Positions 6,012 to 56,848 of a stretch of DNA of 64,000 nucleotides are shown here, in pieces. A model generated the notes under the pieces. It was not told the DNA's origin and did not search any database. It saw nothing but the letters and a program-made list of their open reading frames with translations. The position numbers and the translations under genes were made by a program. Each line of letters opens with the position of its first letter. The stretch's first letter is position 1. Location: positions 124,001-188,000 of IMG/VR virus record IMGVR_UViG_3300036770_006296. The stretch is one strand, 5' to 3'.

Positions 6012-6029
6012 CTAGATTTAATCCCACTC

Positions 6030-7894: not shown

Positions 7895-8257
7895 TTATTT
7901 ATCCTTTAGTTTTTGTGTTTTTCTTTTGGATGCTTCACACTTAGATACCGCGTAATCGTGTGCTCTCTTAAGCCTACTTTTAGTGTCCGGATCTTTTGCT
8001 CTTCTCACAGCAACACGCAGTCTTTGTTCTATGAGATTTAGTATTTGTGACTGTCTTTGATGTGATTTGGATTTAAAAGCTTTACTGTTAACTGTTGCTT
8101 GTACGTCTTCTTTTGTACGAAATTTAACTGGAACGGTGTCACTAGGATTCTCATCCGTGTATAGTCTTCTCCCTGATCCTTTAGGTTTTTTTCCTGTGCC
8201 TTTTCTTGGATCATTTCCTTCGTTGATAAAATCATTAAAGTTTGACAGATGCCTCAT
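7895..8257 (-). CDS. Basic hypothetical protein, CTS-like N-terminus
   Basis: MRHLSNFNDFINE; DPRKGTGKKPKGSGRRLYTDENP segment recalled from conserved viral hypotheticals. Confidence 0.8.
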   Translation of the reverse strand: MRHLSNFNDFINEGNDPRKGTGKKPKGSGRRLYTDENPSDTVPVKFRTKEDVQATVNSKAFKSKSHQRQSQILNLIEQRLRVAVRRAKDPDTKSRLKRAHDYAVSKCEASKRKTQKLKDK

Positions 8258-8289
8258 GTGGTATATATTAAAAAAAGAATATATAAAGC

Positions 8290-8757
8290 ATGATACAACA
8301 CTACGAAGAATTTATAGCAGAAAAGAAAAATCCATGCTGGCCTGGTTACAAGCAGATAGGCACAAAAAAGAAGAATGGTAGGATGGTTCCTAATTGCGTA
8401 AAGGAAAGTGAACTTTCTGGTTACTCGCAAGATTCCTATATAAACGAGGAAAGCGAATCCCACCAAGAATTTGCAGAGAATAGATTAGCGGGAGCAACAA
8501 AAATATCCAAAGCGGCAAAGGAGAAGGGTGGCGATGCTCTACTAACATACCATCATTTTCACGTGAAACTTCCATATTATCAAAAAGCCGTTGATGGTGA
8601 ATTAGAGATGGAAGAACTTAAGGGTGAATATGATAAATTACTAACGGATCTTTATGAAGCCACTAGAAATTCTATGAATATCACGCAGGTAAAATTCCAA
8701 GAGCTTGTTGGAAAGATAGAAGTTGTAGGTGAGCTTTTAATTGAAAACAATAAATAA
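8290..8757 (+). CDS. Putative internal head protein
   Basis: MIQHYEEFIAE nearly matches the T4 IPII/IPIII CTS MKTYQEFIAE; followed by CWPGYKQIGTKKKNGRMVPNCV module. Confidence 0.75.
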   Translation: MIQHYEEFIAEKKNPCWPGYKQIGTKKKNGRMVPNCVKESELSGYSQDSYINEESESHQEFAENRLAGATKISKAAKEKGGDALLTYHHFHVKLPYYQKAVDGELEMEELKGEYDKLLTDLYEATRNSMNITQVKFQELVGKIEVVGELLIENNK

Positions 8758-8765
8758 ATGGCATT

Positions 8766-9572
8766 TTGAAATATATTAAACTATTCGAGTCTTTCCTTAA
8801 CGACTCCTCTACTATTATATTATTCGGACCCCAAGGGGTTGGTAAAAGCACACTTGCAAAAGAACTAGGTAAACAACTAAACATGGAAGTAGTTGGATCC
8901 GATGATTTTATTGATCAGGGAAATTGGTCAAAAGAAGAGATATGGAGTAAAGGGTGGCAAGTTAGAAAACAAAACGAATATAAAGGTATGATTAAGTACC
9001 TTAATGATAATTTAGGTAAGCCTGTTATATTGGACGTTGGTGGTAGCCATGGAGTATGGGACGGTAGAATGTTAGAAGATATTATGAATATGCTAGAACC
9101 ATATCCTAATAGATTCTTAATAATACCTTCTAAGAATGAAATAGAAAACCAAGAGTTTTTAAGAGGTAGATTATTGAAAAGAGAATTGGATATGCACCCA
9201 TCCAATATTAAATATTGGGAAGCTGTTTTGAAGGGTGATACAAGCTTTGCAAAAGATTTTGACCAAGAAAAAAGGAATGAATTTTTAGAGAGAGTAGAAC
9301 TAGTAAGGAAAGAAGAAAAATATAGAACAATGGCTATGAATATGCTTAAATCTAGCCAGAACAGATATAACTCTCTAAAAAGCGGGGTTGAGTGGATGGT
9401 TTACGGTAATTCACCAGAACAAAAATTCGATTTTGAAATGAATAAGATTGAGGATTATTCTAAGTTCTTTATAGACACGATGAAAAATTCAGGAATAGCT
9501 AATCACATAATTTATAATAAGGATAAGCCCTCCAATTTGTTAGTTGATGAAATAAAAAAATTATTAAAATAG
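8766..9572 (+). CDS. P-loop kinase (shikimate/nucleotide kinase-like), CTS-like N-terminus
   Basis: IILFGPQGVGKST Walker A, VVGSDDF, ILDVGG; TTG start LKYIKLFESF (an ATG GCA TTT lies 8 nt upstream, out of frame). Confidence 0.8.
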   Translation: MKYIKLFESFLNDSSTIILFGPQGVGKSTLAKELGKQLNMEVVGSDDFIDQGNWSKEEIWSKGWQVRKQNEYKGMIKYLNDNLGKPVILDVGGSHGVWDGRMLEDIMNMLEPYPNRFLIIPSKNEIENQEFLRGRLLKRELDMHPSNIKYWEAVLKGDTSFAKDFDQEKRNEFLERVELVRKEEKYRTMAMNMLKSSQNRYNSLKSGVEWMVYGNSPEQKFDFEMNKIEDYSKFFIDTMKNSGIANHIIYNKDKPSNLLVDEIKKLLK

Positions 9573-9573
9573 A

Positions 9574-10299
9574 ATGAGACATTTAAAATTATTTGAATCG
9601 TTTATAGCTAAGAAAAATCCTAACTATAAAAAACCTGAGTATGAATTTAAAGAGTTCTATAGGGCTTTTAAATCTTATCCAGAGTTAAGAGAGCTTCTCC
9701 CCTCGGAGATAGACCAAGATATATTTGATATTAGAGAAGATGGATTTGGGGGAGAGCCAAAATGGTTAGAAAACCACGTGGATCCGCCTAGCAAACCGGG
9801 CGAAATAACAACTGATGAACTCTTAGATATAGCTGAGGAAAGAGATCCAAGATTTGTTCCTTTTATTCTTTGGTGTCGTGAATTATTTGAATGTGGGGAA
9901 ATGGAAAAGATTCCTCTTGATTATTTAAGGAGAGGATTAGCTACTACATTTAAAAATCATGATTGGGATATTTTAGAGAAAGATCCGGATTATTTAGGTA
10001 AATGTGAGAGCGAATACAATAAAGCAATCGAAGCAGGATTAGACGACTATACCCTTGGTAATACATTAGGGCTTGTAAAAAAATATCCAGACATTGCTAT
10101 AAACATGGCTCAATTCTGGGCGACTTACATAAAAGGATCCATAGCACACTTTAACCGTGTTGAAGAAAGTGGAGGACAATTACCATGTACACAGTTTATA
10201 TTGTATAGAGGTAATTACTACACAATAGGAGGTAGAAGAAGAATGTTCTGGCACTTCTATAATCACATAGATCCCACAGTTTGGATAATGGAACAATAA
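9574..10299 (+). CDS. Hypothetical protein, CTS-like N-terminus, weak ParB/Srx-like C-terminal motif
   Basis: MRHLKLFESF; YYTIGGRRRM. Confidence 0.7.
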   Translation: MRHLKLFESFIAKKNPNYKKPEYEFKEFYRAFKSYPELRELLPSEIDQDIFDIREDGFGGEPKWLENHVDPPSKPGEITTDELLDIAEERDPRFVPFILWCRELFECGEMEKIPLDYLRRGLATTFKNHDWDILEKDPDYLGKCESEYNKAIEAGLDDYTLGNTLGLVKKYPDIAINMAQFWATYIKGSIAHFNRVEESGGQLPCTQFILYRGNYYTIGGRRRMFWHFYNHIDPTVWIMEQ

Positions 10300-10303
10300 G
10301 TGT

Positions 10304-10771
10304 ATGTATTTATTAGAAGCTTCACATTTTGATACCACTTACGGAAGGGCTAGTTATGGCTATTATCTTATCGGATACAAGAGCGACGAGGAATGTAGAA
10401 AAAAAATAGAGGATATCCTTTTCGATCTAGAATTTGAAAGAGAACACGCTCGTATGATTATAGATGGGATACCTGATGTTTCTTTTGTTCAACATGGGGA
10501 GGATGATCATTATGAGGTTAACAAGATTGGAAGAATAAATTCTCCTTGTGAGTTCTATAAAACTATAGCAGATAGCTATTATAGATTTAAGAGTTATATG
10601 GACGATGACACTAACACTGAATATGATGAGTACTACTTTACATATTATGACGAGGATTATTTCGTAAGCGGTGACAGTATAAATAGCAACAACCGCCACT
10701 TCTTTTATAACATAGAATTAATGAGAAGATATAGAATATGTTTTAATCCATTAAAGAATCTTATAAAATAG
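10304..10771 (+). CDS. Acidic Tyr-rich hypothetical protein
   Basis: 155-aa ORF in co-oriented array. Confidence 0.7.
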   Translation: MYLLEASHFDTTYGRASYGYYLIGYKSDEECRKKIEDILFDLEFEREHARMIIDGIPDVSFVQHGEDDHYEVNKIGRINSPCEFYKTIADSYYRFKSYMDDDTNTEYDEYYFTYYDEDYFVSGDSINSNNRHFFYNIELMRRYRICFNPLKNLIK

Positions 10772-10797
10772 GATATATAATAGTAAATAATAAAAAA

Positions 10798-11538
10798 ATG
10801 AAAAAGCACCTTAAATCTTTTGACGATTTCTCTTTAAATGAGGGGATATTTGACATCTTTAGAAGTAAGAAAGAAATGCCTCCTAGCTTTGGTTATTCAC
10901 CGGATAAGAGTAAAGACTCTTATTTAAAATCCGCTACACATTCACAGATAAATATAACTTATGAAACCAGCTGGGATGCTTCTTTTGTTATTGATATTTC
11001 GGGAGATTTAATATCAAAAGGGAGAGATAGCTATGTTATAACACCTAGAAAAATTAAGGTTTTTCCTACATATAAAGGATCAACATACGGTGGTACAGTA
11101 AATAATATTCCTATCGATTTTTATGGACATTATTATAATAGGGGAACGGATCAATATGAGAAAAACCCAATTCCTTTACAACAAAGTCAGCGTTTGAGTG
11201 AAATTGATGATTTGGAGGATGATATTAACAGAGAAATGCAGTCTCATATAGGAAAAGATTTAACACTTAGTTTTTATGAATTGGATCTAGAAGCTTGGGC
11301 AGAAGAACATTCGGACCCTCTGTTTATAATGGGAAAGAAAACTCCTAGTTGGGTAAAAAATGGTGTTAAGCTTCCTTTGATTGAAGGAGGGGAACTTCCA
11401 GAAACAAATTTATTAGACGATAGAAATAGGTTAAAAGAGGCTATTTGGGTAAGCATCTCTGGGATGGGATATGCCTTTGCAAGACCAGGAAATGGTATAT
11501 TGAGAGAAATATCTGTTTATAGCACAGAAATGTGGTAA
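10798..11538 (+). CDS. Hypothetical protein, CTS-like N-terminus
   Basis: MKKHLKSFDDFSLNE; GGATATATA at 10781. Confidence 0.8.
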   Translation: MKKHLKSFDDFSLNEGIFDIFRSKKEMPPSFGYSPDKSKDSYLKSATHSQINITYETSWDASFVIDISGDLISKGRDSYVITPRKIKVFPTYKGSTYGGTVNNIPIDFYGHYYNRGTDQYEKNPIPLQQSQRLSEIDDLEDDINREMQSHIGKDLTLSFYELDLEAWAEEHSDPLFIMGKKTPSWVKNGVKLPLIEGGELPETNLLDDRNRLKEAIWVSISGMGYAFARPGNGILREISVYSTEMW

Positions 11539-22222: not shown

Positions 22223-22348
22223 AGTCAGGTGGCGGAATTGGTAGACGCATAAATAAAGGTTAACAGTAAGGATAACGTAGAGTAACCTTGAAATACCCAT
22301 AAGTATAGCTCATAAGTTATCATACAGGTTCGAATCCTGTCCTGACTA
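22223..22348 (+). ncRNA. tRNA-like RNA with non-canonical, expanded central region
   Basis: Acceptor AGTCAGG/CCTGACT plus discriminator A; D-arm GCG-GAATTGGTAGA-CGC; T-arm ACAGG-TTCGAAT-CCTGT; 126 nt total with 75-nt centre. Confidence 0.75.
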
Positions 22349-23691: not shown

Positions 23692-23747
23692 AATTAATAA
23701 ATCCTTTTTTATAAATATCATTTTTCTCTATCTTAGTAGAAAACAGA

Positions 23748-24648: not shown

Positions 24649-24716
24649 AGAAATCCTTTTTTTATAAAGATCCAATATTCTAACTTAGCAGACAATTTAA
24701 ATTAAAAATATAAAGA

Positions 24717-25577
24717 ATGAGACAACTTAAGATCACATCGAGTATTACAAGTAGGGAAGATAAAGCTTTAGAAAAATATTTACAAGATATTTCAAAGGAG
24801 GAAATGATTACTGCCGACGAGGAAACACATTTAACCAGAAGAATAAAAGATGGGGACCAGGAGGCTTTAGATAAAATGGTTAGAGCAAACTTAAGATTCG
24901 TTGTGTCAGTTGCCAAGCAATATCAACATCAAGGTCTTCCCCTGGTTGATCTAATAAACGAGGGAAATGTTGGACTGATAAAAGCTGCTAAAAAATTCGA
25001 TGAGACAAGGGGATTTAAGTTTATATCGTATGCTGTTTGGTGGATTAGACAAGCAATAATGGAAGCTCTTTCAGAGAAAGCGAGAGTTATAAGAATACCT
25101 TTAAATCAAGTTGGTGTTTTAAGTAAAATAAACAAGGCATATGCTAGATTAGAGCAGGATCTAGGTAGAGCTCCATCCTCTGAAGAGATAGCAGATGAAC
25201 TGGATCTCCCAGAACAGAAAGTCAAAGACACTTTAAGCAGTTCGAGAAATCATGTATCCTACGACGCTCCAATGGGGGGTGACCAAGAAAACTCCTCAAT
25301 GATAGAAGTACTAAGCAACGATTTCCCCTCAACAGATTCTATAATGATAGAGGAATCCTTAAGGGTTGATATTGAAAGAAGTCTCTCCGCCTTAGATCCT
25401 AAATGTAGAGAGATAATAAAATTAAACTACGGAATAGGATACACACATCCTAAATCATTAGATGAGATTGGTGAAAAATACTCTCTGACTAAGGAAAGAG
25501 TAAGACAGATTAGAGAAAAGGGTCTTAGAAAGCTAAGGGTTGAATCTAGAAGCAAAACACTAAAACAATATCTCTAG
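24717..25577 (+). CDS. rpoD: RNA polymerase sigma-70 factor, Bacteroidota primary-sigma type
   Basis: MRQLKITSSIT.RE..LEKYLQDI; NLRFVVSVAKQY; DLINEGNVGL; KFISYAVWWIRQ; LTKERVRQIREK; no region 1.1. Confidence 0.95.
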   Translation: MRQLKITSSITSREDKALEKYLQDISKEEMITADEETHLTRRIKDGDQEALDKMVRANLRFVVSVAKQYQHQGLPLVDLINEGNVGLIKAAKKFDETRGFKFISYAVWWIRQAIMEALSEKARVIRIPLNQVGVLSKINKAYARLEQDLGRAPSSEEIADELDLPEQKVKDTLSSSRNHVSYDAPMGGDQENSSMIEVLSNDFPSTDSIMIEESLRVDIERSLSALDPKCREIIKLNYGIGYTHPKSLDEIGEKYSLTKERVRQIREKGLRKLRVESRSKTLKQYL

Positions 25578-34561: not shown

Positions 34562-34612
34562 AATCATTTTTTTATTGGTGCTTTAATCTCTATATTTGGA
34601 CAAAAATCATTT

Positions 34613-40445: not shown

Positions 40446-40652
40446 ATGAAAAAAAAACAAGAAATCATCAGGGAAAAAGAGATAGATATTCCTACCTTAG
40501 CTGGTAAAAGAAAACAGCTTTTCGATAATATGAGAATTCTATATCCTAAAGGAAAAAAAGAGGCACAAATGGATCTTTGTCAAGAATTACATGAAAGTAG
40601 GATCGATTATTATCTTGAAAGTATCTTTAGCTTAAAAATTAAAAACAAATGA
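40446..40652 (+). CDS. Small hypothetical protein
   Basis: 68-aa ORF. Confidence 0.6.
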   Translation: MKKKQEIIREKEIDIPTLAGKRKQLFDNMRILYPKGKKEAQMDLCQELHESRIDYYLESIFSLKIKNK

Positions 40653-40891
40653 GAAAAACATTATTTATTCCTGCTATCGTATCTGTTCTTTGTTCGTGTG
40701 CTATTAAAAACGGAACTAAGGAGATAGATTGCGTTGTCACTAAATCTGAGGCGATACCAAAGAAATCTATTCATGACGAGATGAATCCTACTAAATATAT
40801 GATCGAAACAGATTGTGGAAAATTTTTTAGCTCTAGAGAAAATTATCAAGTTGGTGACACAGTTAAAATGACTATAGTCTATTACAAGTAA
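40649..40891 (+). CDS. Small lipoprotein
   Basis: AIVSVLCS-C lipobox. Confidence 0.65.
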   Translation: MRKTLFIPAIVSVLCSCAIKNGTKEIDCVVTKSEAIPKKSIHDEMNPTKYMIETDCGKFFSSRENYQVGDTVKMTIVYYK

Positions 40892-40937: not shown

Positions 40938-41750
40938 ATGATACTTAAATTAGGCTCCAAAGGTACAGCGGTAGAAAAACTACAGAATTTTTTAGGTGTA
41001 CCGATCAATGGAAATTTCGACGAAAGCGTAGATAAAGCTTTAAAAACTTGGCAAAAATCAAACGGATTAAAAGATGATGGTATAGCAGGACCAATCACTC
41101 TTAAAAAAATGGGTATAATCCTAGAATCCGATATCCCTGTTCCTACTTCTTCTTTTAAACTTGATAAGTTAAAAGGACATATTCCCGATTCTGTTATAGC
41201 TCAAATACCAGATACCGCAGCTAAATTTGGAATAACAAACGTGCTTAGACTTTCGCATTTTCTTGCACAGTGTGGGCACGAGTCTGGAGGTTTTAAGGCA
41301 GTATCAGAAAATCTTAACTATTCAGCCGATGGTTTAAAAAAGATATTTGGAAAATATTTCCCTGGTAATCTTAATGAGTCATATGCTAGACAACCAGAAA
41401 AAATTGCTGCTAGAGTTTACGGAAGTAGAATGGGAAATGGCGATGAAGCTTCCAAAGACGGATGGAAATTTAGAGGAAGAGGATACATCCAATTAACAGG
41501 AAAATCTAATTACGAAGCATTCGACAAATTTGTAGATGATGACATATTAGGTAATCCAGATTTAGTTGCAACCAAATACCCTCTAATGTCAGCAGCTTGG
41601 TTTTTCAATAAAAATGGTCTATGGACTATTTGTGATAAGGGCGCGGATGATGCAACGGTTACTGCTGTTACAAAAAGAGTAAACGGAGGAACTATAGGAT
41701 TATCTGATAGGATTAAACATTTTAAAGAGTATTATTCTTTGCTTAAATAA
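40938..41750 (+). CDS. Endolysin: PG-binding domain plus GH19 (chitinase-like lysozyme) domain
   Basis: LKLGSKG.AV..LQ...WQK.NGL..DGIAGP.T; HFLAQCGHESG; FRGRGYIQLTGKSNY; VTKRVNGG; behind GGATATATA. Confidence 0.9.
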   Translation: MILKLGSKGTAVEKLQNFLGVPINGNFDESVDKALKTWQKSNGLKDDGIAGPITLKKMGIILESDIPVPTSSFKLDKLKGHIPDSVIAQIPDTAAKFGITNVLRLSHFLAQCGHESGGFKAVSENLNYSADGLKKIFGKYFPGNLNESYARQPEKIAARVYGSRMGNGDEASKDGWKFRGRGYIQLTGKSNYEAFDKFVDDDILGNPDLVATKYPLMSAAWFFNKNGLWTICDKGADDATVTAVTKRVNGGTIGLSDRIKHFKEYYSLLK

Positions 41751-41775: not shown

Positions 41776-42384
41776 ATGTGTTATACTAGAGAACAAATAG
41801 AAAAGGCTGTTAAAGCAAAAGGATATGTTTGGTTCGCGGATGATGCAAACAAAACATACGACGTAAACATAGTTGGTGTTAGAAATAATGCACCAAGTGT
41901 TGCTGATAAGGTAACTAATGTTTTTGATGACTGTTTAACAATCTCTTATAAAGACGAAGCTGCTGCATGGCAATTCTTCTGCTGGATGGGAACTTGTGAC
42001 CCGGGTAAAAAAGGGGTTATGGAGTTTCATAACAATAAAGGAGTTGCTAGATTAGTACCCGGTCAATATAGAGGGGTTTGGAAAATAGACAAACACCAGG
42101 GCAAATACGATGCTCTTTGTCAAAGAAACGGAAACGTAACTGTTTGGAGAGATGCTAATAGAGATTTGCTTTTTGAAGAAAAAGTAACAGACACTGGTAT
42201 GTTTGGTATTAACATACACAAAGCAGGACAAGATTCTACATGGGTAGAAAATTGGTCAGAGGGGTGTCAAGTATTTAAAAGAGTTAAGGATTTTGATGCT
42301 TTTATGGCTATTTGTAGAAAAGCTTCTAAAATTCACGGGAATAAGTTCTCTTATACTCTATTAGAATCTACGGATATAGTTTAA
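41776..42384 (+). CDS. L,D-transpeptidase (YkuD)-like cell-wall enzyme
   Basis: GINIHKAG......NWSEGCQV (His...Ser-x-Gly-Cys motif). Confidence 0.6.
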   Translation: MCYTREQIEKAVKAKGYVWFADDANKTYDVNIVGVRNNAPSVADKVTNVFDDCLTISYKDEAAAWQFFCWMGTCDPGKKGVMEFHNNKGVARLVPGQYRGVWKIDKHQGKYDALCQRNGNVTVWRDANRDLLFEEKVTDTGMFGINIHKAGQDSTWVENWSEGCQVFKRVKDFDAFMAICRKASKIHGNKFSYTLLESTDIV

Positions 42385-42385
42385 T

Positions 42386-42652
42386 CTATATTCTTTTTAT
42401 CAATATTTTAAGATCTTTAGATCCTTTTATGAGGCGATGATATTCGCCTCTTTTTATTTGTATAGGCCCTTTTAGTTCGATCGGGAGAAGATTATCAAAT
42501 TGAAATTTCCAATCAGTTTCTCCTATAGCTTCTATTATCCTGTCCTCTTCATCGAAGTGCCATTTAAGCTCCTCGTCAAATAAAGATTCTTTAAATATCC
42601 TGATGGATTCTTTCTCTGAAATCCATTCCTCTCCGAAGGGTAAATCTTCCAT
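42386..42652 (-). CDS. Cupin-like conserved phage protein
   Basis: ELKWHFDEEDR...WKFQFDN.LP...YHRLIKG; GATATATA upstream. Confidence 0.65.
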   Translation of the reverse strand: MEDLPFGEEWISEKESIRIFKESLFDEELKWHFDEEDRIIEAIGETDWKFQFDNLLPIELKGPIQIKRGEYHRLIKGSKDLKILIKRI

Positions 42653-42705
42653 AATTTATATATCTTTTTTAAGGCCACGAAGGAATATATAATACAACTA
42701 ACACT

Positions 42706-44472
42706 ATGTCTACTCTATCTAAAATCTCTCTGGTATTATCTGCTTTAATAATGTCTATTTATTTTAGTATACAATCTCTATTAGTTTTCAATTATATCGA
42801 TTATACGGAATCTTTGGGTAGATTTGAATATGGATGTTTCGTTTTATTTGTCCCACTTTTTTCGATAGTTGTTAGAGAGTTTATAATAAAAAATAAGAGG
42901 AGTATTAAATTAAATATCTATGGTAAAAAATTAAATGACGTTCTTGTGAAGCAGTCGCATAATAGATTATTCTATAATGGAAATCTATCAGAGGCTGCTA
43001 AAGAATTAACTAAAGAGGTCACACAATCCATTAATGTTGAGAGATGCTCAGTTTGGCTATACAATAGGGATAAAACATCAATAGTTTGCCAACAGCTTTA
43101 TATTAAGTCAGAGTACACTTGGTATCAGGGATCTGAATTACTCGAGAAAGACTTTAGGCCCTATTTTGATGCTTTGAAAAATAATCCTGTCATTGTAGCA
43201 AATAATGCAGAGAAACATCCCTCTACATCTTGCTTTAGTGAAGTTTATTTAAAACCATTGGGCATAAAATCGATGTTAGATGTACCTATCCTGTTTAAAG
43301 GTGATGTAATAGGAGTAATATGTATAGAGAGCTTAGTAAAAAAAGAATGGTGTGAATTCGAGATTAATTTTTCCAAGTTGCTCTCTTCCTTATATACTTT
43401 TTCTTATTCAGTAAAAGAAAACAAAAAACAAGATCAAAAAATAGATGACATTAATAATTTTATAGATGAAGCTGCCCTTGTTTCTAAAACAGACGCAAAG
43501 GGAAAAATTGTATATGTGAATAAAAAATTCGAGGAGGTATCAGGATGGAGTCTGAAAGAAGTAATAGGTAAGGACCACAATATAGTTAATTCAGGTGAAC
43601 ATCCCAAGGAAATGTGGGCAGAAATGTATAAGAGTGTTTTAGTAGATAAAAATATTTGGAATAGGGTTATTACAAACAAAGCAAAAGATGGACATTTATA
43701 CCATGTGGACACTTATATAAAAGCGGAATTCGACACGGAGACTGGAGATCTAATAGGATTTATTTCTATCAGGCAGGATGTAAGTAAAATAGTATATACA
43801 TTACAAGAGATAGACAAGAAAAATACTTATTTAGAACATGCTGCTAAAATAATTAGACATGACATGCACTCGGGAATAAACACCTATATTCCAAGGGGGA
43901 TTAGCTCACTAGAAAGAAGACTTTCCGACGAAGATATAAAAAATCTTAAAATAGAAGCTCCATTAAAAATGATTAAAGAAGGGCTTAGACATACTCAAAA
44001 GGTATATAAAGGAGTTTATGAGTTTACTAATCTTGTTAAAAAGGACGCAGCCCTTAACAAGGATGAAATAGATCTAAAGTATATCCTCGACGATTATCTT
44101 TCTTCGACTGCTTATAAAAGCCAGGTTGATATATCAAACTTAGGAAAGTTTAGTGTCAATGAGGCTCTTTTTTGCACTGCAATTGATAATTTAATAAGGA
44201 ACGGACTTAAATATAATGATAGTAACAACAAATCTGTAAAAATATCAAGAATAGGAAATATTATTTATGTTGAAGACAATGGTAGAGGCTTAACATCTGA
44301 AGAATTTAAGACTCTTTCTAAACCATATACTAGGAAGGAGGGTCAAAAAGAAACCGGTACTGGCTTAGGATTAAATATATGTATATCAATACTCAAAGAA
44401 CACGGATTTTCAGTCGATTGTGAAAAAAAGGTTGAAGGCGGATCTAGAATAAAAATAAAGTTAGATAAATGA
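42706..44472 (+). CDS. Sensor histidine kinase (2 TM-GAF-PAS-HisKA-HATPase)
   Basis: GAF ERCSVWL...LDVPI...IGVICIE; PAS VNKKFEEVSGW...HNIVNSGEH...NKAKDG; H box IIRHDMHSG; N box DNLIRNGLKY; G1 VEDNGRG; G2 GTGLGL. Confidence 0.92.
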   Translation: MSTLSKISLVLSALIMSIYFSIQSLLVFNYIDYTESLGRFEYGCFVLFVPLFSIVVREFIIKNKRSIKLNIYGKKLNDVLVKQSHNRLFYNGNLSEAAKELTKEVTQSINVERCSVWLYNRDKTSIVCQQLYIKSEYTWYQGSELLEKDFRPYFDALKNNPVIVANNAEKHPSTSCFSEVYLKPLGIKSMLDVPILFKGDVIGVICIESLVKKEWCEFEINFSKLLSSLYTFSYSVKENKKQDQKIDDINNFIDEAALVSKTDAKGKIVYVNKKFEEVSGWSLKEVIGKDHNIVNSGEHPKEMWAEMYKSVLVDKNIWNRVITNKAKDGHLYHVDTYIKAEFDTETGDLIGFISIRQDVSKIVYTLQEIDKKNTYLEHAAKIIRHDMHSGINTYIPRGISSLERRLSDEDIKNLKIEAPLKMIKEGLRHTQKVYKGVYEFTNLVKKDAALNKDEIDLKYILDDYLSSTAYKSQVDISNLGKFSVNEALFCTAIDNLIRNGLKYNDSNNKSVKISRIGNIIYVEDNGRGLTSEEFKTLSKPYTRKEGQKETGTGLGLNICISILKEHGFSVDCEKKVEGGSRIKIKLDK

Positions 44473-45074
44473 AAAAAATATTTTTAATTATTATCCTATT
44501 GGGGATAAGGGGATTTTGCTTTTCTCAAAACTTTTATCCGATACAAACAATTTTAAAAGGAGATTCTGTTGTTATATACACGCTAGAACAGTCTCAAGAT
44601 ATAAATCTAATGATACAGAATCAAAAATCATTAAATGTAAGCTATAAGAGCAAATATGAGCACTATCTAGGAAAAACAGACAGTTTAGAAAAAATAGTAG
44701 CTGCGCAACTGTACTTGATTGATAGCTTAAGATTAGTTCAAAAAAATCAAGATAGCTTGGAAAAAAAATTACACACAATAGAAAGTTGGTTAGTAAAAGC
44801 ATCAATCGATAACTCTTACCTCTATATGTCATGGCAGGATTCTAAAATTAAATCGGTGGACCTAACATTATATACTGTTCATTGCAGTATGCAAACAGGA
44901 ACGATAAGAATGGTTAGGAGAGGTCCTAATGATGAATTTTATACCTGGAAAGGAATAAACCACACAAGAAGAGAAAGCCCCTCCATTAACTGGGAATTAA
45001 AATATCCAGAGGAAGATAGGCCGATAGTTAATAATTTACCAGTAGATATCAAAATAAGTCAATATGTAAGATGA
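44469..45074 (+). CDS. Secreted/periplasmic hypothetical protein in two-component cluster
   Basis: Signal peptide ending FCFSQ; overlaps both kinase genes. Confidence 0.75.
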   Translation: MKKIFLIIILLGIRGFCFSQNFYPIQTILKGDSVVIYTLEQSQDINLMIQNQKSLNVSYKSKYEHYLGKTDSLEKIVAAQLYLIDSLRLVQKNQDSLEKKLHTIESWLVKASIDNSYLYMSWQDSKIKSVDLTLYTVHCSMQTGTIRMVRRGPNDEFYTWKGINHTRRESPSINWELKYPEEDRPIVNNLPVDIKISQYVR

Positions 45075-46510
45075 AAAAAATAGTGCTTTTAGTAGTAATA
45101 CTATTCTCTTTCCAGAGCTTTTCTACCGCTCAAGGAATAACCCCGAATAAAAAATCTATAGTTGAAGCTGTTTGGGATCAAGGAATACCAGTTTGTCCTG
45201 ATGACAAATACATATCTTCACTTATCGACAAAGTTGGATTTGATAATCTAAGAAATAATAAAAAACCTATTGATAAGAATGAAGCTAAATTGTGTAGGGA
45301 GATAGGGATTGCTTTTTACAATAGGGGAATGTATGAAGCTGCTGACTGGTATTTAGAAAGAGTCAGAGGATACGTTGAGGTTGTAGAACTCGAGCCGGAG
45401 GTGGTTTTTGAAACACCCAAGCAGGAAGAGGAAGAGGAGGATGTTTCTATAGATGATATAAAAAGTCTAGAAGCGGACAAGGAATTTTTACAAAATCTTC
45501 CTAAAAGTTACGACAACGTTTCTCCCGGTGACATGAAAAAGTTAGCGGACCAAATTGAAGACCAAATAAAAAAGCTCATTGCAGAAAAAGAAGCTTTATT
45601 AAAAAGAAATGCTCCTAAATCTGTTATAGATGCTAAGGATGCTGCTATAGGATCTTTAGGAAAAGAAAAAGAAATCATAGACCTATCTATAGAAAAAGAA
45701 GATTTAGAGGTAGAAGTAGTTGACTTAGAAGACGATAAAAAAGTATTAAGGAAATATTTAATAGGATCCGTTATAGGAATTATTATAGCTATTTTAGCAA
45801 TAATAGCTCTACTACAAAGGAAAACAATAAGAGTAAAAGACGTAGAGCTAGAAAAGCAGTTAGATGATATCAATAAGAAAAATACTTATCTTGAATATGC
45901 TGCTAGAATTATTAGACATGATATGCACAGTGGTATTAATACTTATATGCCTAGAGGCCTTTCCTCTCTACAGAAAAGAATGGATCAGGAAAAAATCGAT
46001 GAACTAAAGATCGGTCCTTCTTTAAAGATGATTTCAGAGGGATTAGCACACACCCAAAAGGTATATAAAAATGTATATGAATTTACAAATCTCGTAAAAG
46101 TTAAGGCAGATTTTAGTACTAAAGAAATAGATCTAAAGGAGGCTTTGGAGAAATATCTAGCTAACACCTCATACAGAAATCAAGTTGTAATAGATGATCT
46201 TGGTTTGGTAAATGCTAATGAGCAATTGTTTTGTAATGCAATAGATAATCTGATTAAAAATGGCCTCAAATACAACGAGAAAAACGACAAATGTGTTAAG
46301 ATATATAAGGAAGTAGATGTAATAGTTGTTGAAGATAATGGTATAGGATTAACGTCTAAAAAATTCGAAGAATTAATCAAAAAAGGCATTGATACAGAAT
46401 CTGATACCGGTATTGGATTAAGTATTACAAAAGCAATTATTGAAGAACATGGCTATTCCATCTTTTGTGAGAAAGTTGAGAATGGCACAAAAATGAAAAT
46501 AAAAATATAA
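45071..46510 (+). CDS. Sensor histidine kinase (signal peptide, coiled coil, TM, HisKA, HATPase)
   Basis: IIRHDMHSGINTY; DNLIKNGLKY; VEDNGIG; GIGLSI; kinase core closely similar to 42706 gene. Confidence 0.9.
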   Translation: MKKIVLLVVILFSFQSFSTAQGITPNKKSIVEAVWDQGIPVCPDDKYISSLIDKVGFDNLRNNKKPIDKNEAKLCREIGIAFYNRGMYEAADWYLERVRGYVEVVELEPEVVFETPKQEEEEEDVSIDDIKSLEADKEFLQNLPKSYDNVSPGDMKKLADQIEDQIKKLIAEKEALLKRNAPKSVIDAKDAAIGSLGKEKEIIDLSIEKEDLEVEVVDLEDDKKVLRKYLIGSVIGIIIAILAIIALLQRKTIRVKDVELEKQLDDINKKNTYLEYAARIIRHDMHSGINTYMPRGLSSLQKRMDQEKIDELKIGPSLKMISEGLAHTQKVYKNVYEFTNLVKVKADFSTKEIDLKEALEKYLANTSYRNQVVIDDLGLVNANEQLFCNAIDNLIKNGLKYNEKNDKCVKIYKEVDVIVVEDNGIGLTSKKFEELIKKGIDTESDTGIGLSITKAIIEEHGYSIFCEKVENGTKMKIKI

Positions 46511-46511
46511 A

Positions 46512-46943
46512 ATGATTAATTCTATACTATTAGTTGATGATGAGGATTTATTCCACTTAGTTTTTGAAGATGCCTGCAGTCTTTTGGATATAACACTTTC
46601 TCTTGAAAGTCTAACTTCTGCTGATGAAGCAGAGAAACTGTTTAAAGCATGGCACAAAGAAGCCGATGGAAAACCTGAGTGTGTGTTTGTAGATCTTAAT
46701 ATAATAGGTTCTTCTTTCGATGGCATAGAGCTAATAAGAAAAATAAATTTTGAATACGGTAATCATGTTGTTATCGGTATTATCTCCTCATCAAACGAAC
46801 CAGAGGAACAATCAAAAGCTTTACAGGCCGGAGCTCAGTTTTGGATAATAAAATCCGACGACATAGAACCTAGGTTAGAGGATTTTAAAAAAGATTATGA
46901 GGGATATAAAAACAGAACAAATTCGTTCAAGGTTTATAAATAG
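46512..46943 (+). CDS. Single-domain response regulator (receiver)
   Basis: ILLVDDE; VFVDLNI phospho-Asp; IISSS; IIKS; no output domain. Confidence 0.9.
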   Translation: MINSILLVDDEDLFHLVFEDACSLLDITLSLESLTSADEAEKLFKAWHKEADGKPECVFVDLNIIGSSFDGIELIRKINFEYGNHVVIGIISSSNEPEEQSKALQAGAQFWIIKSDDIEPRLEDFKKDYEGYKNRTNSFKVYK

Positions 46944-46948
46944 AATAT

Positions 46949-47626
46949 ATGAAGCTAAACAAAGAAACTAGGGGACAGCTTCTAGATTTATGGAAGAAAA
47001 GAAAAATAAGTCTAAGTGGTAATATCCTAAAGGTTATAGATGCTGATGGTGACGAGGAGCTGAAAAAATATTTAGACGAATCTATCCAAAGAGACAACGA
47101 AGTTAGAAGAAAAAGACTGGATGTTACTAAGAAGGTGCAATCACAAAATGATGAGCTAATAGTTTGGAAAGAAGAGAATGAAAAGATACAAAAAGAACTT
47201 CTAGATTCTCTTAAAAAAACTGAGGAGTCAATGCAGGAGTCAGAAAGACTCAGAGAAGAAGCAGAAAAAGCCAAAGAAGAAGCAGAAGCTTCAATGTTAG
47301 AAGCTCAATCTGCTAAAGAAGAAGCTGAAATAGCTAGAGAAGAAGCAGAAAATGCTAAAAACGCTGCAGAAAATGATCTAGATCTGATACAGAAAAAAAC
47401 GCAGTTTGAATTAATAGGAACTATTATTAGAGTTGCTCTTTGGGTAATTCTTGGAGTAGGTGTTGTAACAACTATGGTTTATCTTATAGCTCTTTTTACT
47501 GGAGTTGATACTGCAGTTATTGGATCAACTTGGTCAAATATAGTTGGTATACTATTGACCAACTCATTTAGCATAGTTGGTACTATAATGGGTGTAAAAT
47601 ACGCATCTGAAAAGGAAAGTAAATAG
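46949..47626 (+). CDS. Coiled-coil protein with two C-terminal TM helices
   Basis: EAEKAKEEAE-type repeats then two hydrophobic segments; co-oriented with the two-component genes. Confidence 0.8.
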   Translation: MKLNKETRGQLLDLWKKRKISLSGNILKVIDADGDEELKKYLDESIQRDNEVRRKRLDVTKKVQSQNDELIVWKEENEKIQKELLDSLKKTEESMQESERLREEAEKAKEEAEASMLEAQSAKEEAEIAREEAENAKNAAENDLDLIQKKTQFELIGTIIRVALWVILGVGVVTTMVYLIALFTGVDTAVIGSTWSNIVGILLTNSFSIVGTIMGVKYASEKESK

Positions 47627-48510: not shown

Positions 48511-49392
48511 ATGCGGGATTTTAAAATAATTAACCGGATAACAAATACCTCTGATAATCTAAACCGATACTTCAATGAAATATCAAAATATGAATTATTA
48601 AGTGCTGAGAAAGAGGCTGAACTTGCTTTTAAAGCTAAGGCTGGTGACGAAAAAGCTAAAGAAGCAATATTAAAATCTAATCTAAGATTTGTTATTTCTG
48701 TTGCAAAATCGTATGTTTCTGGCAACTCCCCACTGGAAGATCTTATATCTGAAGGAAACAAAGGATTAGTAGAAGCAGTCGAAAATTTCGATCCGACTAC
48801 CGGATTCAAATTTATTAGTTATGCTGTTTGGCATATTAGGAAAAACATACTTGTATATCTTAATAATCACACAAGATCCATAAGAATCCCTTCTAACGTA
48901 AATAATGAGATGCGAAAATATCATGCTATAGAGGAATCTTTTATCTCTTATAATGGTAGGGAACCTTCAATAGATGAGATGCTAGAGATAATAGAAAATC
49001 CTGAATATGGGATCCAGATTTCTAACGCCACAATAGATACAATTAAAAACACCCCGTTATCTATTCCTCTCGAAAATTACGGAAAAGAAAATGACGAGAT
49101 TGGCTCTCCTCTAAGTTGGTTGCAATCATCTGAAAATAGTGATGGTATAACATTGAGTGACGATATCAGGAATATTATCTTGCGAGTTCTTTCAGAGTTA
49201 AAGCCTATGGAAAGGGAAGTTACTATTTTAAAATACGGACTTGGAGACTCAAAAGAACCTATGAGCTATAAAGCTATAGGGGAGAAGCTAGAAAAAACAA
49301 CAGAATGGGCTAGGATTATTTCTAAGAAAGCTGAAATGAGGATGAAGGCTATTATTAGGAGAAGAAAAATAAAAGAATTATTCTTCGATTAA
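48511..49392 (+). CDS. Second, divergent sigma-70 family factor
   Basis: NLRFVISVAKSY; DLISEGNKGL; FKFISYAVWHIRK; region 4 TTEWARII. Confidence 0.9.
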   Translation: MRDFKIINRITNTSDNLNRYFNEISKYELLSAEKEAELAFKAKAGDEKAKEAILKSNLRFVISVAKSYVSGNSPLEDLISEGNKGLVEAVENFDPTTGFKFISYAVWHIRKNILVYLNNHTRSIRIPSNVNNEMRKYHAIEESFISYNGREPSIDEMLEIIENPEYGIQISNATIDTIKNTPLSIPLENYGKENDEIGSPLSWLQSSENSDGITLSDDIRNIILRVLSELKPMEREVTILKYGLGDSKEPMSYKAIGEKLEKTTEWARIISKKAEMRMKAIIRRRKIKELFFD

Positions 49393-49768: not shown

Positions 49769-50596
49769 ATGAGACATCTTAAATCATTAGAAGAGTTTAG
49801 AATAGTTAATGAGCAGCTATTTAAAGATGGCGAAGCATTAATGAAACTCTTAAGCGGAGGTAAACTTCAGGATTCTCCTGTAGAAGGATCAGTAACAATA
49901 AAAGGAGGAGCTATATCAGGGGATAAAGCCAAAAATGCACAAGCAGTGATAAATTCTATGAATAAGCATGGAATAACAAACCCTTACACACAAAAAGCAA
50001 TACTAGGTGTAATTGGTAAAGAGTGCGGGTTCATACCTCAAAATGAGACATCATACTCTACCACTTCTTCTGCTAGAATAAGAAGTATATTTGGTGAAAG
50101 AGTTAGTAAAATGACTGATGCACAGATTGATCAGTTAAAAAAGAACGATGAAGCTTTCTATAATTACCTGTACGGCGGAAGATACGGAAATGCTCCTAAT
50201 GAGGGATACAAATATAGAGGTAGAGGATTTAATGGTATAACATTCAAAGGGGTTTACCAAAAAATGAATGATCTCATGAATCGGATTGGAAAGCTGGATA
50301 GAAAGGTTGATCTAGTGGCTAATCCAGATGTCATTAATGATATAGATGTTGCTGCAGAATCTGCAGTGCTTTATTTTATAGACAGGGCTTCTTCCCCAGA
50401 AATGAACAAGAAATATGGTGTTAAGGATCTAAACGGATTCAAAGACGAGGAAACAGCAGTTAAAGCTATGGTTCATGCAAATGCTGGATGGGGATCTAAT
50501 ATGAATTCTCCGTTTCTAGCAACTAGCTTAAATAAGGCTAAGGATATGGCTAAGCAATTTAGTATTGCAGATTTAGGTCAAAATAATTTAGCTTAA
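49769..50596 (+). CDS. NEQLF-module protein 4, GH19/lysozyme-like domain
   Basis: MRHLKSLEEFRIVNEQLFKDGEALMKLLSG; AILGVIGKECG...QNE; YRGRGFNGITFKGVY. Confidence 0.8.
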   Translation: MRHLKSLEEFRIVNEQLFKDGEALMKLLSGGKLQDSPVEGSVTIKGGAISGDKAKNAQAVINSMNKHGITNPYTQKAILGVIGKECGFIPQNETSYSTTSSARIRSIFGERVSKMTDAQIDQLKKNDEAFYNYLYGGRYGNAPNEGYKYRGRGFNGITFKGVYQKMNDLMNRIGKLDRKVDLVANPDVINDIDVAAESAVLYFIDRASSPEMNKKYGVKDLNGFKDEETAVKAMVHANAGWGSNMNSPFLATSLNKAKDMAKQFSIADLGQNNLA

Positions 50597-56787: not shown

Positions 56788-56848
56788 AATGTATTTATCC
56801 AACTCTATAAAAACATTTTTTTTAAACAAATGAATTTTCTAGGTTTGC

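What the first reader, a model, noticed from the sequence alone, without database searches (positions are those of the whole stretch)
42706..47626. Complete phage-encoded two-component signalling operon with no DNA-binding output
Seen: five tightly coupled genes behind a late-type motif (GAATATATA near 42682): a TM-GAF-PAS kinase, a secreted protein, a second membrane kinase, a stand-alone receiver, and a coiled-coil 2-TM protein. All catalytic boxes are present. Both kinases share an atypical RHDMHSGINTY H-box and near-identical cores, suggesting duplication within the phage lineage. The PAS resembles Aer/NifL-type redox sensors. Inference: the phage senses host energy state and a periplasmic cue and signals by protein contact, perhaps to time lysis (the lysis enzymes lie just upstream) or to gate superinfection, or it hijacks host regulators.
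Basis: partly seen in the sequence, partly recalled or inferred. Interest (0 to 1): 0.82.

Follow-up and report, generated by a model that had tools for sequence, protein, structure and literature searches.

The report
Jumbo-phage two-component system beside lysis genes
A family of very large freshwater phages carries its own sensor-kinase/receiver signalling pathway, always followed by a virus-only membrane protein and usually next to the cell-wall-degrading enzymes, so the phage may sense the state of its host to decide when to burst it.

Summary
At 42706-47626 five tightly packed + strand genes encode a 2TM-GAF-PAS histidine kinase (K1), a signal-peptide protein (sec201), a second kinase with a periplasmic domain (K2), a 143-aa receiver with no output domain (RR), and a coiled-coil protein with two C-terminal TM helices (CC225).

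It is neither chimeric nor a recent host transfer. The stretch occurs in DNA runs from at least 12 studies. At least 482 IMG/VR viral contigs, up to 322 kb, encode the RR, and one homologous module lies on a 591-kb contig.

The conserved core is kinase-RR-CC225. RR is followed by CC225 in 80 of 80 loci. RR is 77-88% identical across these phages, whereas kinase sensor domains vary. K2 and sec201 are accessory. The five-gene order recurs in 14 other loci.

CC225 has no Pfam family, no fold match and only viral look-alikes. Endolysin genes are about 30 times denser within 2.5 kb of the module than further out. Three different endolysin classes directly follow CC225 in different lineages.

Best reading, which is inferred: phospho-RR acts on CC225 to gate lysis.

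The exact GAATATATA 9-mer is not enriched, although the related GATATATAA is.

The parts
42682..42692 (+). GGAATATATAA, a promoter-like element 13 nt upstream of the K1 start; a one-base variant of the enriched GATATATAA motif
   Evidence: Sequence read. The exact 9-mer is not enriched. GATATATAA has 16 sites against 2.85 expected, mostly 3-21 nt upstream of start codons, including the lysin genes at 40938 and 49769. It is not conserved upstream of K1 in other lineages except L044.
42706..44472 (+). K1: membrane-anchored sensor histidine kinase. TM 4-22 and 43-61, GAF 93-227, PAS 258-360, H-box with His385, HATPase_c 489-587
   Evidence: There are thousands of homologues, and the best 120 score above 830 bits.
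43477..43785 (+). PAS domain of K1 (aa 258-360), of the MmoS/NifL/Aer type, so putatively flavin-binding and redox-sensing
   Evidence: PDB phmmer hits: 3ewk MmoS 1.1e-19, 8dik Aer 6e-12, 2gj3 NifL 9e-12. NCBIfam NifL gives 76 bits on the PAS only, below its cut-off. Cofactor binding was not tested.
44469..45074 (+). sec201: protein with a signal-peptide-like N-terminus and no known family; accessory partner of K2
   Evidence: Homologues occur only immediately upstream of K2, with 12 distinct sequences at 23-63% identity. The AF2 model has pLDDT 70.7 and no fold match. The Atlas search was uninformative.
45071..46510 (+). K2: second histidine kinase. Signal peptide or TM1 4-22, extracytoplasmic domain of about 210 aa, TM 230-248, H-box with His283, HATPase_c 385-478
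   Evidence: The periplasmic domain is found in 176 protein clusters, all with K2 architecture. K2 lies outside the K1 clade on a long branch.
46512..46943 (+). RR: stand-alone receiver of 143 aa. Acidic pair D9/D10, phospho-acceptor D61, S92-94, K114, and a 25-aa C-terminal tail with no output domain
   Evidence: It is 77-88% identical across phages whose kinases are 43-60% identical.
46949..47626 (+). CC225: virus-specific membrane protein. A conserved N-terminal head (aa 1-35), one continuous helix of about 150 aa with a variable-length central coil, TM1 about 155-184, TM2 about 189-216 (nearly invariant, with small-xxx-small spacing), and a charged C-terminal tail
   Evidence: It follows RR in 80 of 80 loci and in distant modules.
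40938..41750 (+). Endolysin (PG_binding_1 + GH19), part of the lysis context of the module
   Evidence: Pfam and phrog_181 at 6e-70. GATATATAA lies 17 nt upstream.
41776..42384 (+). phrog_3000 protein, with a weaker match to an endolysin PHROG; a recurrent neighbour of the module
   Evidence: phrog_3000 4.5e-34 and phrog_33083 endolysin 1.7e-11. It sits directly after CC225 or diverges from K1 in many loci.
42431..42450 (+). Terminator-like hairpin plus T-run after the endolysin/phrog_3000 unit, separating it from the K1 operon
   Evidence: 7-bp stem, 5 GC pairs, T-rich tail. Pattern match only.

Best explanation
This is a two-component signalling pathway owned by a large clade of freshwater jumbo phages, whose hosts are probably Bacteroidota.

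One or two sensor kinases feed one receiver. K1 reads the cytoplasm through its GAF domain and a probably flavin-binding PAS domain. K2 is optional and reads the periplasm, probably together with the exported sec201. Both phosphorylate the same single-domain receiver RR on D61.

RR has no DNA-binding or enzymatic domain, so it must act by contact. Its most likely partner is the product of the next, translationally coupled gene, CC225. CC225 is a dimer-like stalk anchored by two highly conserved TM helices, with a conserved cytoplasmic head.

The RR-CC225 pair is embedded in the lysis cassette. CC225 is therefore proposed to be a holin-like protein or a holin regulator, and RR~P is proposed to set the time of lysis after translation, according to host redox or energy state and a periplasmic cue.

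Shown here: domain content, catalytic residues, conservation, gene order, virus-only distribution of RR and CC225, and linkage to endolysins.

Inferred: phosphotransfer, the RR-CC225 contact, what is sensed, and the effect on lysis.
For: - Catalytic motifs are intact in both kinases and in RR.
- The DHp helices of K1 and K2 are almost identical, which fits one shared receiver.
- No other kinase, receiver or HPt gene lies in the 64-kb window.
- RR is followed by CC225 in 80 of 80 IMG/VR loci, often with a 1-4 nt overlap. The same holds in distant modules where RR is only 41-50% identical.
- Kinase inputs vary (GAF-PAS-PAS, GAF-PAS, PAS-PAS, PAS alone, with or without TM helices) while RR and CC225 stay constant. 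This is the pattern expected of variable inputs feeding a fixed output.
- CC225 topology is N-in with a cytoplasmic stalk, so RR can reach it.
- Endolysin-like genes number 60 within 2.5 kb of the module (342.6 kb searched) against 2 beyond 2.5 kb (375.3 kb). In 34 of 80 loci one lies within 150 nt.
- GH19, Peptidase_M15_3 and phrog_3000 lysins each directly follow CC225 in different lineages.
- In the window, CC225 is the only multi-TM small protein near the lysins.
- In this phage the K1 operon carries a variant of the upstream motif that precedes both GH19-type genes.
Against: - CC225 matches no holin family in Pfam or PHROGs, even with its TM part searched alone, and no solved fold.
- At 225 aa, with a 150-aa cytoplasmic stalk, it is unlike typical holins.
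- Some relatives have a separate small TM protein between CC225 and the endolysin (L071, L074, L077). Others have a 170-180-aa single-TM protein after CC225 (L019 group). Either could be the true holin.
- In 31 of 80 loci no endolysin of the three searched types lies within the fetched flank.
- No direct evidence shows RR binding CC225, and no complex could be modelled.
- The only RNA evidence is one 135-nt piece of an RNA-library contig on RR, which does not prove transcription.
- The host is not identified.
Confidence: 0.45

Rival explanations
1. Transcription control by contact. RR~P binds a phage sigma factor, an anti-sigma-like protein or host RNA polymerase, and so switches middle or late transcription. 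CC225 would only tether or sequester RR at the membrane.
For: Two sigma-70-family genes lie in the window, at 24717-25577 and 48511-49392, the latter 0.9 kb downstream of CC225. A sigma gene lies within 7-9 kb of the module in L003-L009, L011 and L071. From my own knowledge, receivers without DNA-binding domains that act on sigma factors are known, such as PorX-SigP in Bacteroidota and RssB. The window has two distinct enriched promoter-like motifs.
Against: The sigma gene is not tightly or consistently linked to the module, with distance and side both varying. The endolysin linkage is tight and recurrent. This reading does not explain why CC225, with its nearly invariant TM helix, always follows RR.
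Confidence: 0.15
2. CC225 is an input rather than an output. It would be an accessory membrane protein or scaffold that modulates the kinases, as in three-component systems. The receiver's real target would be elsewhere, for instance host proteins, host two-component pathways, or a role as a phosphate sink.
For: K1 has two TM helices with almost no periplasmic loop. From my own knowledge, that type often depends on accessory membrane proteins. The TM2 of CC225 is nearly invariant, suggesting specific helix-helix contacts. The extreme conservation of RR would fit a conserved host target.
Against: Several relatives have only a soluble kinase with no TM segment (L032, L048, L054, L086 and the 645-aa class), yet keep CC225 with the same TM2. 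In L100 the RR-CC pair has no adjacent kinase at all. The gene order and overlap couple CC225 to RR, not to the kinase.
Confidence: 0.15
3. Superinfection or envelope control. RR~P acts on CC225 to alter the inner membrane, for example to block DNA entry by later phages or to remodel the envelope, rather than to time lysis.
For: K2 and sec201 give a periplasmic input that could report events at the envelope. CC225 is a membrane protein with a conserved polar helix face. From my own knowledge, T4 lysis inhibition links superinfection sensing to lysis, so the two readings overlap.
Against: K2 and sec201 are absent from most relatives, so a periplasmic cue is not essential to the core. Nothing links the module to injection or receptor genes. 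The recurrent neighbours are lysins.
Confidence: 0.1
4. The cluster is a recently captured host operon with no phage-specific role, or an assembly chimera.
For: Histidine kinases and receivers are typical cellular genes, and JGI annotates relatives with generic cellular names.
Against: - A contig in run X1 spans 42300-47149 with no mismatch. Runs from other studies match with one mismatch. Runs from at least 12 studies hold the stretch.
- At least 482 viral contigs carry the RR.
- The nearest RR and CC225 look-alike clusters in the ESM Atlas are viral.
- Against 1.84 billion representatives, the RR family drops straight from 80% to at most 50% identity. The three next-tier relatives whose context I looked up (41-50% identity) sit in the same module.
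- The species-representative genome scan found no close cellular homologue, but it reaches close relatives only.
- GC content is flat across the region.
Confidence: 0.02

Closest known systems
Classical two-component systems with a stand-alone receiver (for example CheA/CheY, Cph1/Rcp1, DivJ-PleC/DivK)
   Same: An HK core with a phospho-acceptor His, N, G1 and G2 boxes, and a receiver with the D-D-D-S/T-K pocket and no output domain that must act by protein contact. JGI names relatives 'Cph1' or 'bacteriophytochrome' kinase, which reflects the HK core type.
   Different: The whole pathway is encoded by a virus. The DHp is not recognised by Pfam HisKA. RR has only weak relatives among solved structures, the best being 3ilh at 3e-5. 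The invariably linked partner is a membrane coiled-coil protein known only from viruses.
T4 lysis inhibition (holin T with antiholin RI) and other holin/antiholin timing devices
   Same: The proposed logic is the same: a signal sensed during infection acts after translation on a membrane protein of the lysis cassette to set lysis time. CC225 shares generic holin traits, namely TM helices, a charged C-terminal tail, and a position directly before an endolysin gene in many relatives.
   Different: There is no sequence or fold relation to any holin or antiholin family. The signal would pass through phosphotransfer, not through direct periplasmic binding. CC225 is larger and has a long cytoplasmic stalk. 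The function is untested.
LytSR/CidR-type bacterial control of holin-like cid/lrg genes (own knowledge)
   Same: A two-component system coupled to holin-like membrane proteins and to membrane energy state.
   Different: LytR is a DNA-binding regulator that acts on transcription, and the system is cellular. Here the receiver has no DNA-binding domain and the system is viral.
Phage-borne signalling genes already known: agr-type kinase genes in a Clostridioides difficile phage, quorum-sensing receptors of vibriophage VP882, arbitrium (own knowledge; review PMC7790227); PHROG families 857, 10912 and 731
   Same: Phages can carry sensors of host or population state. PHROGs already holds kinase-like and receiver-like phage families, which K1, K2 and RR match weakly to moderately.
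   Different: Those cases, as I recall them, are either incomplete pathways or act on lysis-lysogeny transcription. The best tblastn matches to K1 in 50,697 deposited phage records are partial (17-41% of K1) and 24-32% identical. No paper describing this K-RR-CC225 module was found.
'Moraphages', freshwater jumbo phages of Bacteroidota (PMC12619734)
   Same: Freshwater origin, genomes of 200-307 kb, a sigma factor in the core genome, DnaK in some genomes, and predicted Flavobacteriia hosts. Here the contig is 206.6 kb, the DNA runs are freshwater and subsurface, a relative has DnaK directly upstream of K1 (L019), and there are two sigma factors.
   Different: Membership of that lineage was not tested here. 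That paper mentions neither kinases nor response regulators.

Membership tests
Two-component system: histidine kinase (HisKA-type DHp + HATPase_c) | Phospho-acceptor His in a DHp helix, alignable to a solved kinase | tested here: met
   K1 'iirHDmhsg' aligns with HK853 'n-isHElrtp'. This gives His385 in K1 and His283 in K2.
Two-component system: histidine kinase (HisKA-type DHp + HATPase_c) | Recognition by the Pfam HisKA (PF00512) model | tested here: not met
   No HisKA hit for K1, K2 or ten relatives. The precomputed Pfam lists of 120 homologues also lack it.
Two-component system: histidine kinase (HisKA-type DHp + HATPase_c) | ATP-binding domain with N, G1 and G2 boxes | tested here: met
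   HATPase_c scores 9e-15 for K1 and 3e-11 for K2, above cut-off. DNLI[RK]NGLKYN, EDNG[RI]GL and G[TI]GLGL/GIGLS are all present.
Two-component system: histidine kinase (HisKA-type DHp + HATPase_c) | Autophosphorylation and phosphotransfer to the receiver | not testable with these tools
   Needs biochemistry.
Two-component system: receiver domain | Acidic pair, phospho-acceptor Asp, Ser/Thr and Lys of the active pocket | tested here: met
   Response_reg scores 39.6 bits against a cut-off of 30.2. D9, D10, D61, S92-94 and K114 are invariant in 9 diverse relatives.
DNA-binding response regulators (OmpR, NarL, LytTR, NtrC types) | An output domain C-terminal to the receiver | tested here: not met
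   RR is 143 aa, with the receiver spanning 5-115 and only a 25-aa tail. No second Pfam or NCBIfam domain is found. All close relatives are 143-145 aa.
Flavin-binding PAS sensors (MmoS PAS-A, NifL PAS1, Aer) | Sequence similarity to the flavin-binding PAS subgroup | tested here: met
   3ewk 1.1e-19, 8dik 6e-12, 2gj3 9e-12. The 'GKDHNIVNSGEHP' stretch aligns with 'GQDHRIVNSGYHG' of MmoS.
Flavin-binding PAS sensors (MmoS PAS-A, NifL PAS1, Aer) | Bound FAD and a redox-dependent signal | not testable with these tools
   Needs spectroscopy of the purified domain. Individual flavin-contact residues were not checked.
Holins (any described family) | Sequence membership of a holin family in Pfam or PHROGs | tested here: not met
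   No holin hit for whole CC225. The TM part alone (aa 150-225) gives no hit better than E = 0.02 at a cut-off of E <= 1, and none to a holin family.
Holins (any described family) | Small membrane protein with at least one TM helix and a charged C-terminal tail | tested here: inconclusive
   CC225 has two TM helices and the tail KYASEKESK. However, it is 225 aa with a 150-aa cytoplasmic helix.
Holins (any described family) | Gene adjacent to the endolysin gene | tested here: met
   An endolysin-like gene lies within 150 nt of the module in 34 of 80 loci and directly after CC225 (10-23 nt) in about 20. Three endolysin classes are involved. In the window itself the lysins lie 0.3-1.8 kb upstream.
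Holins (any described family) | Forms membrane lesions that release the endolysin | not testable with these tools
   Needs expression and lysis assays.
Chemotaxis CheY pathway | Accompanying CheA, CheW or MCP genes, or a motor-switch target | tested here: not met
   No such genes lie in the module or its flanks. The kinases are HisKA-like, not CheA-like.
Known anti-phage defence systems (PADLOC) | A match of any module protein to a defence-system model | tested here: not met
   The only hit is a marginal BrxB match on K2 (E = 0.0017, 16 bits).

The most novel reading that the evidence does not exclude
Hundreds of jumbo phages run their own phosphorelay that decides, after translation, when the cell is opened. 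A flavin-PAS/GAF kinase would read the host's redox or energy state, or nucleotide signals. An optional periplasmic kinase with an exported co-sensor would read the envelope. The phosphorylated receiver would then switch a new kind of long-stalked, holin-like membrane protein on or off. This would be a two-component analogue of T4 lysis inhibition and the first viral signalling pathway with a viral membrane effector as its output.
Probability: 0.35. Interest if true: 0.85.

Novelty: new variant of a known kind. Interest (0 to 1): 0.7.

Why it matters
Lysis timing sets phage fitness. It is thought to be governed mainly by holin clocks, with few known cases of signal input.

A virus-owned sensor pathway wired to the lysis cassette would show that large phages measure host physiology themselves and adjust the end of infection accordingly. 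The module is conserved across hundreds of abundant freshwater jumbo phages.

It also defines a large, uncharacterised, virus-only membrane protein family (CC225) with a clear hypothesis attached. It offers a compact kinase/receiver/membrane-effector set that can be tested in vitro without a cultured host.

If the lysis link is wrong, the finding still stands as a widespread viral two-component system whose receiver target is unknown.

Tried and rejected
- **Deposited phage genomes.** Megablast of the cluster found no match. tblastn with K1 found only partial matches (17-41% of K1, 24-32% identity).
- **Species-representative genomes.** The scan with K1 gave only 29% HATPase matches in Ruminococcus MAGs.
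- **Fold searches.** The CC225 model had no PDB match at E <= 10. The sec201 model had none at E <= 0.001. The Atlas search on sec201 was uninformative. The phrog_3000 protein has no PDB relative by sequence.
- **Family libraries.** PADLOC and NCBIfam gave nothing above cut-off.
- **Recent duplication of the kinases.** Rejected. The K1 core is 94% identical to its nearest orthologue but 59% identical to K2, and K2 lies outside the K1 clade. Whether the two K2 sequences form one clade is uncertain, because long branches meet.
- **Internal promoter.** A GATATATAA site inside K2 at 46300 could drive RR-CC225, but it is not conserved in relatives, so I left it open. Sigma-70 consensus promoters are not enriched.
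- **CC225 TM helices conserved because they contact the kinase TM helices.** Weakened by relatives that have soluble kinases.
- **Transcription evidence.** One metatranscriptome run holds a single 135-nt piece of RR. This is not proof of expression.
- **RR-CC225 complex modelling.** Not possible with the tools at hand.
- **Literature.** Seven searches found no description of this module. The library holds open-access papers only.

Full report
**1. The observation**

The five ORFs lie exactly where stated, all on the + strand:
- K1, 42706-44472
- sec201, 44469-45074
- K2, 45071-46510
- RR, 46512-46943
- CC225, 46949-47626

The junctions are a 4-nt overlap, a 4-nt overlap, a 1-nt gap and a 5-nt gap. 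No terminator-like site lies on the + strand inside the cluster. One lies just upstream at 42431-42450, after the endolysin/phrog_3000 unit.

Pfam finds GAF, PAS and HATPase_c in K1, HATPase_c in K2, and Response_reg alone in RR. It finds nothing for sec201 or CC225.
- K1 has two N-terminal TM helices.
- sec201 has a signal-like N-terminus.
- K2 has a signal or TM1 segment and a TM at 230-248, so about 210 aa are extracytoplasmic.
- CC225 has two C-terminal TM helices.

Both kinases contain RHDMHSGINTY and the N, G1 and G2 boxes. The first His aligns with the phospho-acceptor His of HK853. Pfam HisKA is not detected. RR has all five receiver pocket residues, and they are invariant in relatives.

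The K1 PAS best matches the PAS domains of MmoS, Aer and NifL. From my own knowledge these bind flavin.

Two details need correcting.
- The kinase cores are 59% identical. Only the DHp helices are nearly identical.
- GAATATATA is not enriched, at 3 sites against 2.78 expected.

**2. Is it phage, and is the contig sound?**

The window is identical to two IMG/VR viral contigs of 86 and 206.6 kb. It carries several phage-type genes:
- a GH19 endolysin (phrog_181, 6e-70)
- a phrog_3000 protein
- a Dda-like helicase (phrog_325, 2.5e-88)
- two sigma-70-family factors (phrog_351)

Most other ORFs have no family. GC content is flat at 31-36%.

The 5.4-kb stretch is held by DNA runs of at least 12 studies, covering subsurface, lake, river, drinking-water and estuary samples. 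A 15,990-nt contig in one run spans 42300-47149 with no mismatch. Contigs from two other studies cover the stretch with one mismatch. The cluster is therefore not an assembly chimera.

**3. What is conserved**

K1 has thousands of homologues, and the best 120 score above 830 bits. One homologous module sits on a 591-kb JGI contig in a phage-like context.

In the 80 best loci, RR is always followed by CC225, often with overlapping stop and start codons. A kinase lies directly upstream wherever sequence is available.

The five-gene order K1-sec201-K2-RR-CC225 recurs in 14 further loci: L019, L023, L024, L026, L027, L029, L030, L032, L041, L053, L054, L092, L095 and L096. It is partly visible in L021 and L068. 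Three of these loci have a homing-endonuclease gene inserted between K2 and RR. K1-K2-RR-CC225 without sec201 occurs in L010, L037, L038 and L049. The remaining loci where enough upstream sequence was fetched have a single kinase.

The core is therefore kinase-RR-CC225, and K2 plus sec201 form an accessory input arm.

The kinase sensor parts vary: GAF-PAS-PAS, GAF-PAS, PAS-PAS or PAS alone, with or without TM helices. RR is 77-88% identical throughout.

Against 1.84 billion cluster representatives, the RR family collapses to one full-length representative at 80% identity. The next tier consists of stand-alone receivers at 41-50% identity. I examined the context of three of these, and each again has a CC225 homologue immediately downstream (HMM E-values 4e-73, 6e-14 and 2e-9).

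The nearest ESM Atlas clusters to RR and to CC225 are viral. No close cellular homologue turned up in the species-representative genome scan, although that scan reaches close relatives only.

The module is therefore old within this phage group and is not a recent host capture.

In a tree of kinase cores, K2 sits outside the K1 clade on long branches. The K2 periplasmic domain occurs in 176 protein clusters, all with K2 architecture. K2 is an old paralogue, not a recent duplicate.

**4. CC225**

The family is very large. More than 6,000 candidates passed E <= 0.001, although coiled-coil composition inflates that count. The best 120 are all 220-231 aa long and 65-100% identical.

An alignment of 35 diverse members shows four regions:
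- a conserved N-terminal part of about 90 aa (G24, N25, K28, D35, Y41, R53, R56 and others)
- a central Ala/Glu-rich stretch that is deleted in variants of 185-191 aa
- a conserved membrane-proximal segment
- a nearly invariant second TM helix, WSNxxGILLTNxFSIxGTIMGxKY, with small residues spaced every four positions

The AlphaFold2 model has mean pLDDT 87.5. It shows a small head, one continuous helix from residue 36 to 184 that runs into TM1, a short loop, and TM2. There is no match among solved structures and no holin, Pfam or PHROG family, even for the TM part alone.

Charge distribution places the stalk and the C-terminal tail in the cytoplasm. That is inferred from the sequence.

**5. 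Link to lysis**

I counted three lysin types as seen in the window: GH19, the GH19-like orf275, and phrog_3000. Sixty such genes lie within 2.5 kb of the module (342.6 kb of flank searched). Only 2 lie further out (375.3 kb). That is roughly a 30-fold difference in density.

An endolysin-like gene lies within 150 nt in 34 of 80 loci, or 19 of 46 after dereplication. The arrangement changes between lineages, but the linkage persists:
- The lysin may directly follow CC225 with a 10-23 nt gap.
- It may diverge from K1.
- It may precede K1 on the same strand.
- In L058 the module lies between a GH19 lysin and an M15 peptidase.

In the distant modules, the gene after the CC225 homologue is a phrog_3000 lysin-like protein (L098) or a Peptidase_M15_3 (L100).

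In the window, the lysins lie 0.3-1.8 kb upstream. CC225 is the only small multi-TM protein in the 39-51 kb region.

Some relatives have other small TM proteins beside CC225. CC225 may therefore regulate a holin rather than be one.

**6. Mechanism proposed**

The shown and inferred steps are kept apart in the Best explanation section. In short, variable sensor kinases phosphorylate one receiver. Because the receiver has no output domain, it acts by contact, most plausibly on the cytoplasmic head or stalk of CC225. This in turn controls membrane permeabilisation or the release of the lysins.

The near-identity of the DHp helices of K1 and K2 fits a shared receiver. What is sensed is inferred only from domain type: the flavin-type PAS, the GAF domain, and the periplasmic K2 with sec201.

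I put 0.45 on this reading. The rivals are transcription control through a sigma factor, CC225 as a kinase accessory, envelope or superinfection control, and a host-derived passenger.

**7. Host and promoters**

GATATATAA is strongly enriched, with 16 sites against 2.85 expected. It lies 3-21 nt upstream of many start codons, including both GH19-type genes. The K1 operon has a one-base variant of it. The motif is lineage-specific.

A second composite motif ends in TCTAnnTTnG, with 6 sites against 0.1 expected. It resembles the Bacteroidota -7 promoter element as I know it.

Together with the freshwater origin and a DnaK gene beside the module in relatives, this fits a Bacteroidota host. It also fits the recently described 'moraphages' (PMC12619734). 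I did not test membership of that lineage.

**8. Novelty**

Phage-borne kinase-like and receiver-like families exist in PHROGs, and single signalling genes are known in other phages. I found no description of this module or of CC225 in seven literature searches of an open-access library.

I rate it a new variant of a known kind. It is a genuine two-component system, but it is virus-owned, has a virus-only membrane partner, and is wired into the lysis cassette.

Noticed in passing
window 5594-6014 (+): A phage-borne tmRNA gene. Rfam RF00023 scores 85 bits (E = 1.6e-31, full-length model), and ARAGORN gives the tag peptide ANVYNAEDMMSIPTSITRVAVAEEAELLMAA.
   Followed up: partly
window 22223-22348 (+): An Rfam tRNA match (40.6 bits) spanning 126 nt, longer than a normal tRNA and not called by ARAGORN. 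It could be an intron-bearing or unusual tRNA, or a false hit.
   Followed up: no
window, 16 sites (for example 1323, 10772, 13580, 17141, 29776, 40912, 49743, 58916 on +; 7066, 31922, 42656, 52205 on -): GATATATAA is about 5.6-fold enriched (16 sites against 2.85 expected, reached by 0 of 100 shuffles). It lies 3-21 nt upstream of start codons, which suggests a phage-specific promoter element, perhaps read by one of the phage sigma factors. One copy lies inside K2 at 46300, about 200 nt before RR. It is not conserved upstream of K1 in most relatives.
   Followed up: partly
window 3884-3915, 23705-23736, 24658-24688, 34568-34598, 56816-56847 (+); 56198-56167 (-): A second promoter-like composite, TTTTTTWT-N(8-30)-TCTAnnTTnG, has 6 sites against 0.1 expected in mononucleotide shuffles. 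Its 3' half resembles the Bacteroidota -7 element TAnnTTTG, which hints at host-type promoters and a Bacteroidota host.
   Followed up: partly
window 24717-25577 (+) and 48511-49392 (+): Two sigma-70-family factors lie in one 64-kb window (phrog_351 at 6e-70 and 1e-47). The second is 0.9 kb downstream of the signalling operon.
   Followed up: partly
window 49769-50596 (+): A second, divergent GH19-like lysin (phrog_181, 5e-19) also has the GATATATAA motif 17 nt upstream. Together with 40938-41750, this phage has two such genes flanking the module region.
   Followed up: partly
L023 3518-4240; also L030 and L054: A 240-aa homing-endonuclease gene (phrog_314, NUMOD3) is inserted between K2 and RR in three relatives. 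It splits the otherwise tight operon.
   Followed up: partly
L019 1506-3377; also L024 and L029: A phage-encoded Hsp70/DnaK (Pfam HSP70, 2e-260) lies directly upstream of K1 in some relatives. This recalls the DnaK-bearing 'moraphages' of PMC12619734.
   Followed up: partly
L016 (JGI contig of 591,103 bp), 8001-11195: The same kinase-RR-225-aa module sits on a 591-kb contig. Its neighbours look phage-like (GH108 lysozyme, adenylosuccinate synthetase, NT5C, many ORFs without a family). If viral, this would be among the largest phage genomes.
   Followed up: no
L071 8094-8411, L074 4978-5286; L019 8133-8675 and 18 homologues: Two further unannotated TM proteins recur beside CC225. One is a 102-105-aa protein lying between CC225 and the endolysin. 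The other is a 170-180-aa single-TM protein with a Pro/Glu-rich tail. Both are candidate holin or spanin-like partners, and neither is present in the window.
   Followed up: partly
window 46463-46643 in runs X4 and X5: Assembly contigs of two independent runs break at the 5' end of RR, and depth doubles there (49-56 against about 23). Reads from co-occurring relatives probably pile up on the highly conserved RR gene, which implies several related phages in one sample.
   Followed up: no
window 40649-40891 (+): An 80-aa ORF just upstream of the GH19 endolysin has a lipoprotein-like signal (…VLCSCAIK…). It could be an outer-membrane spanin-like component. It has no family match.
   Followed up: no
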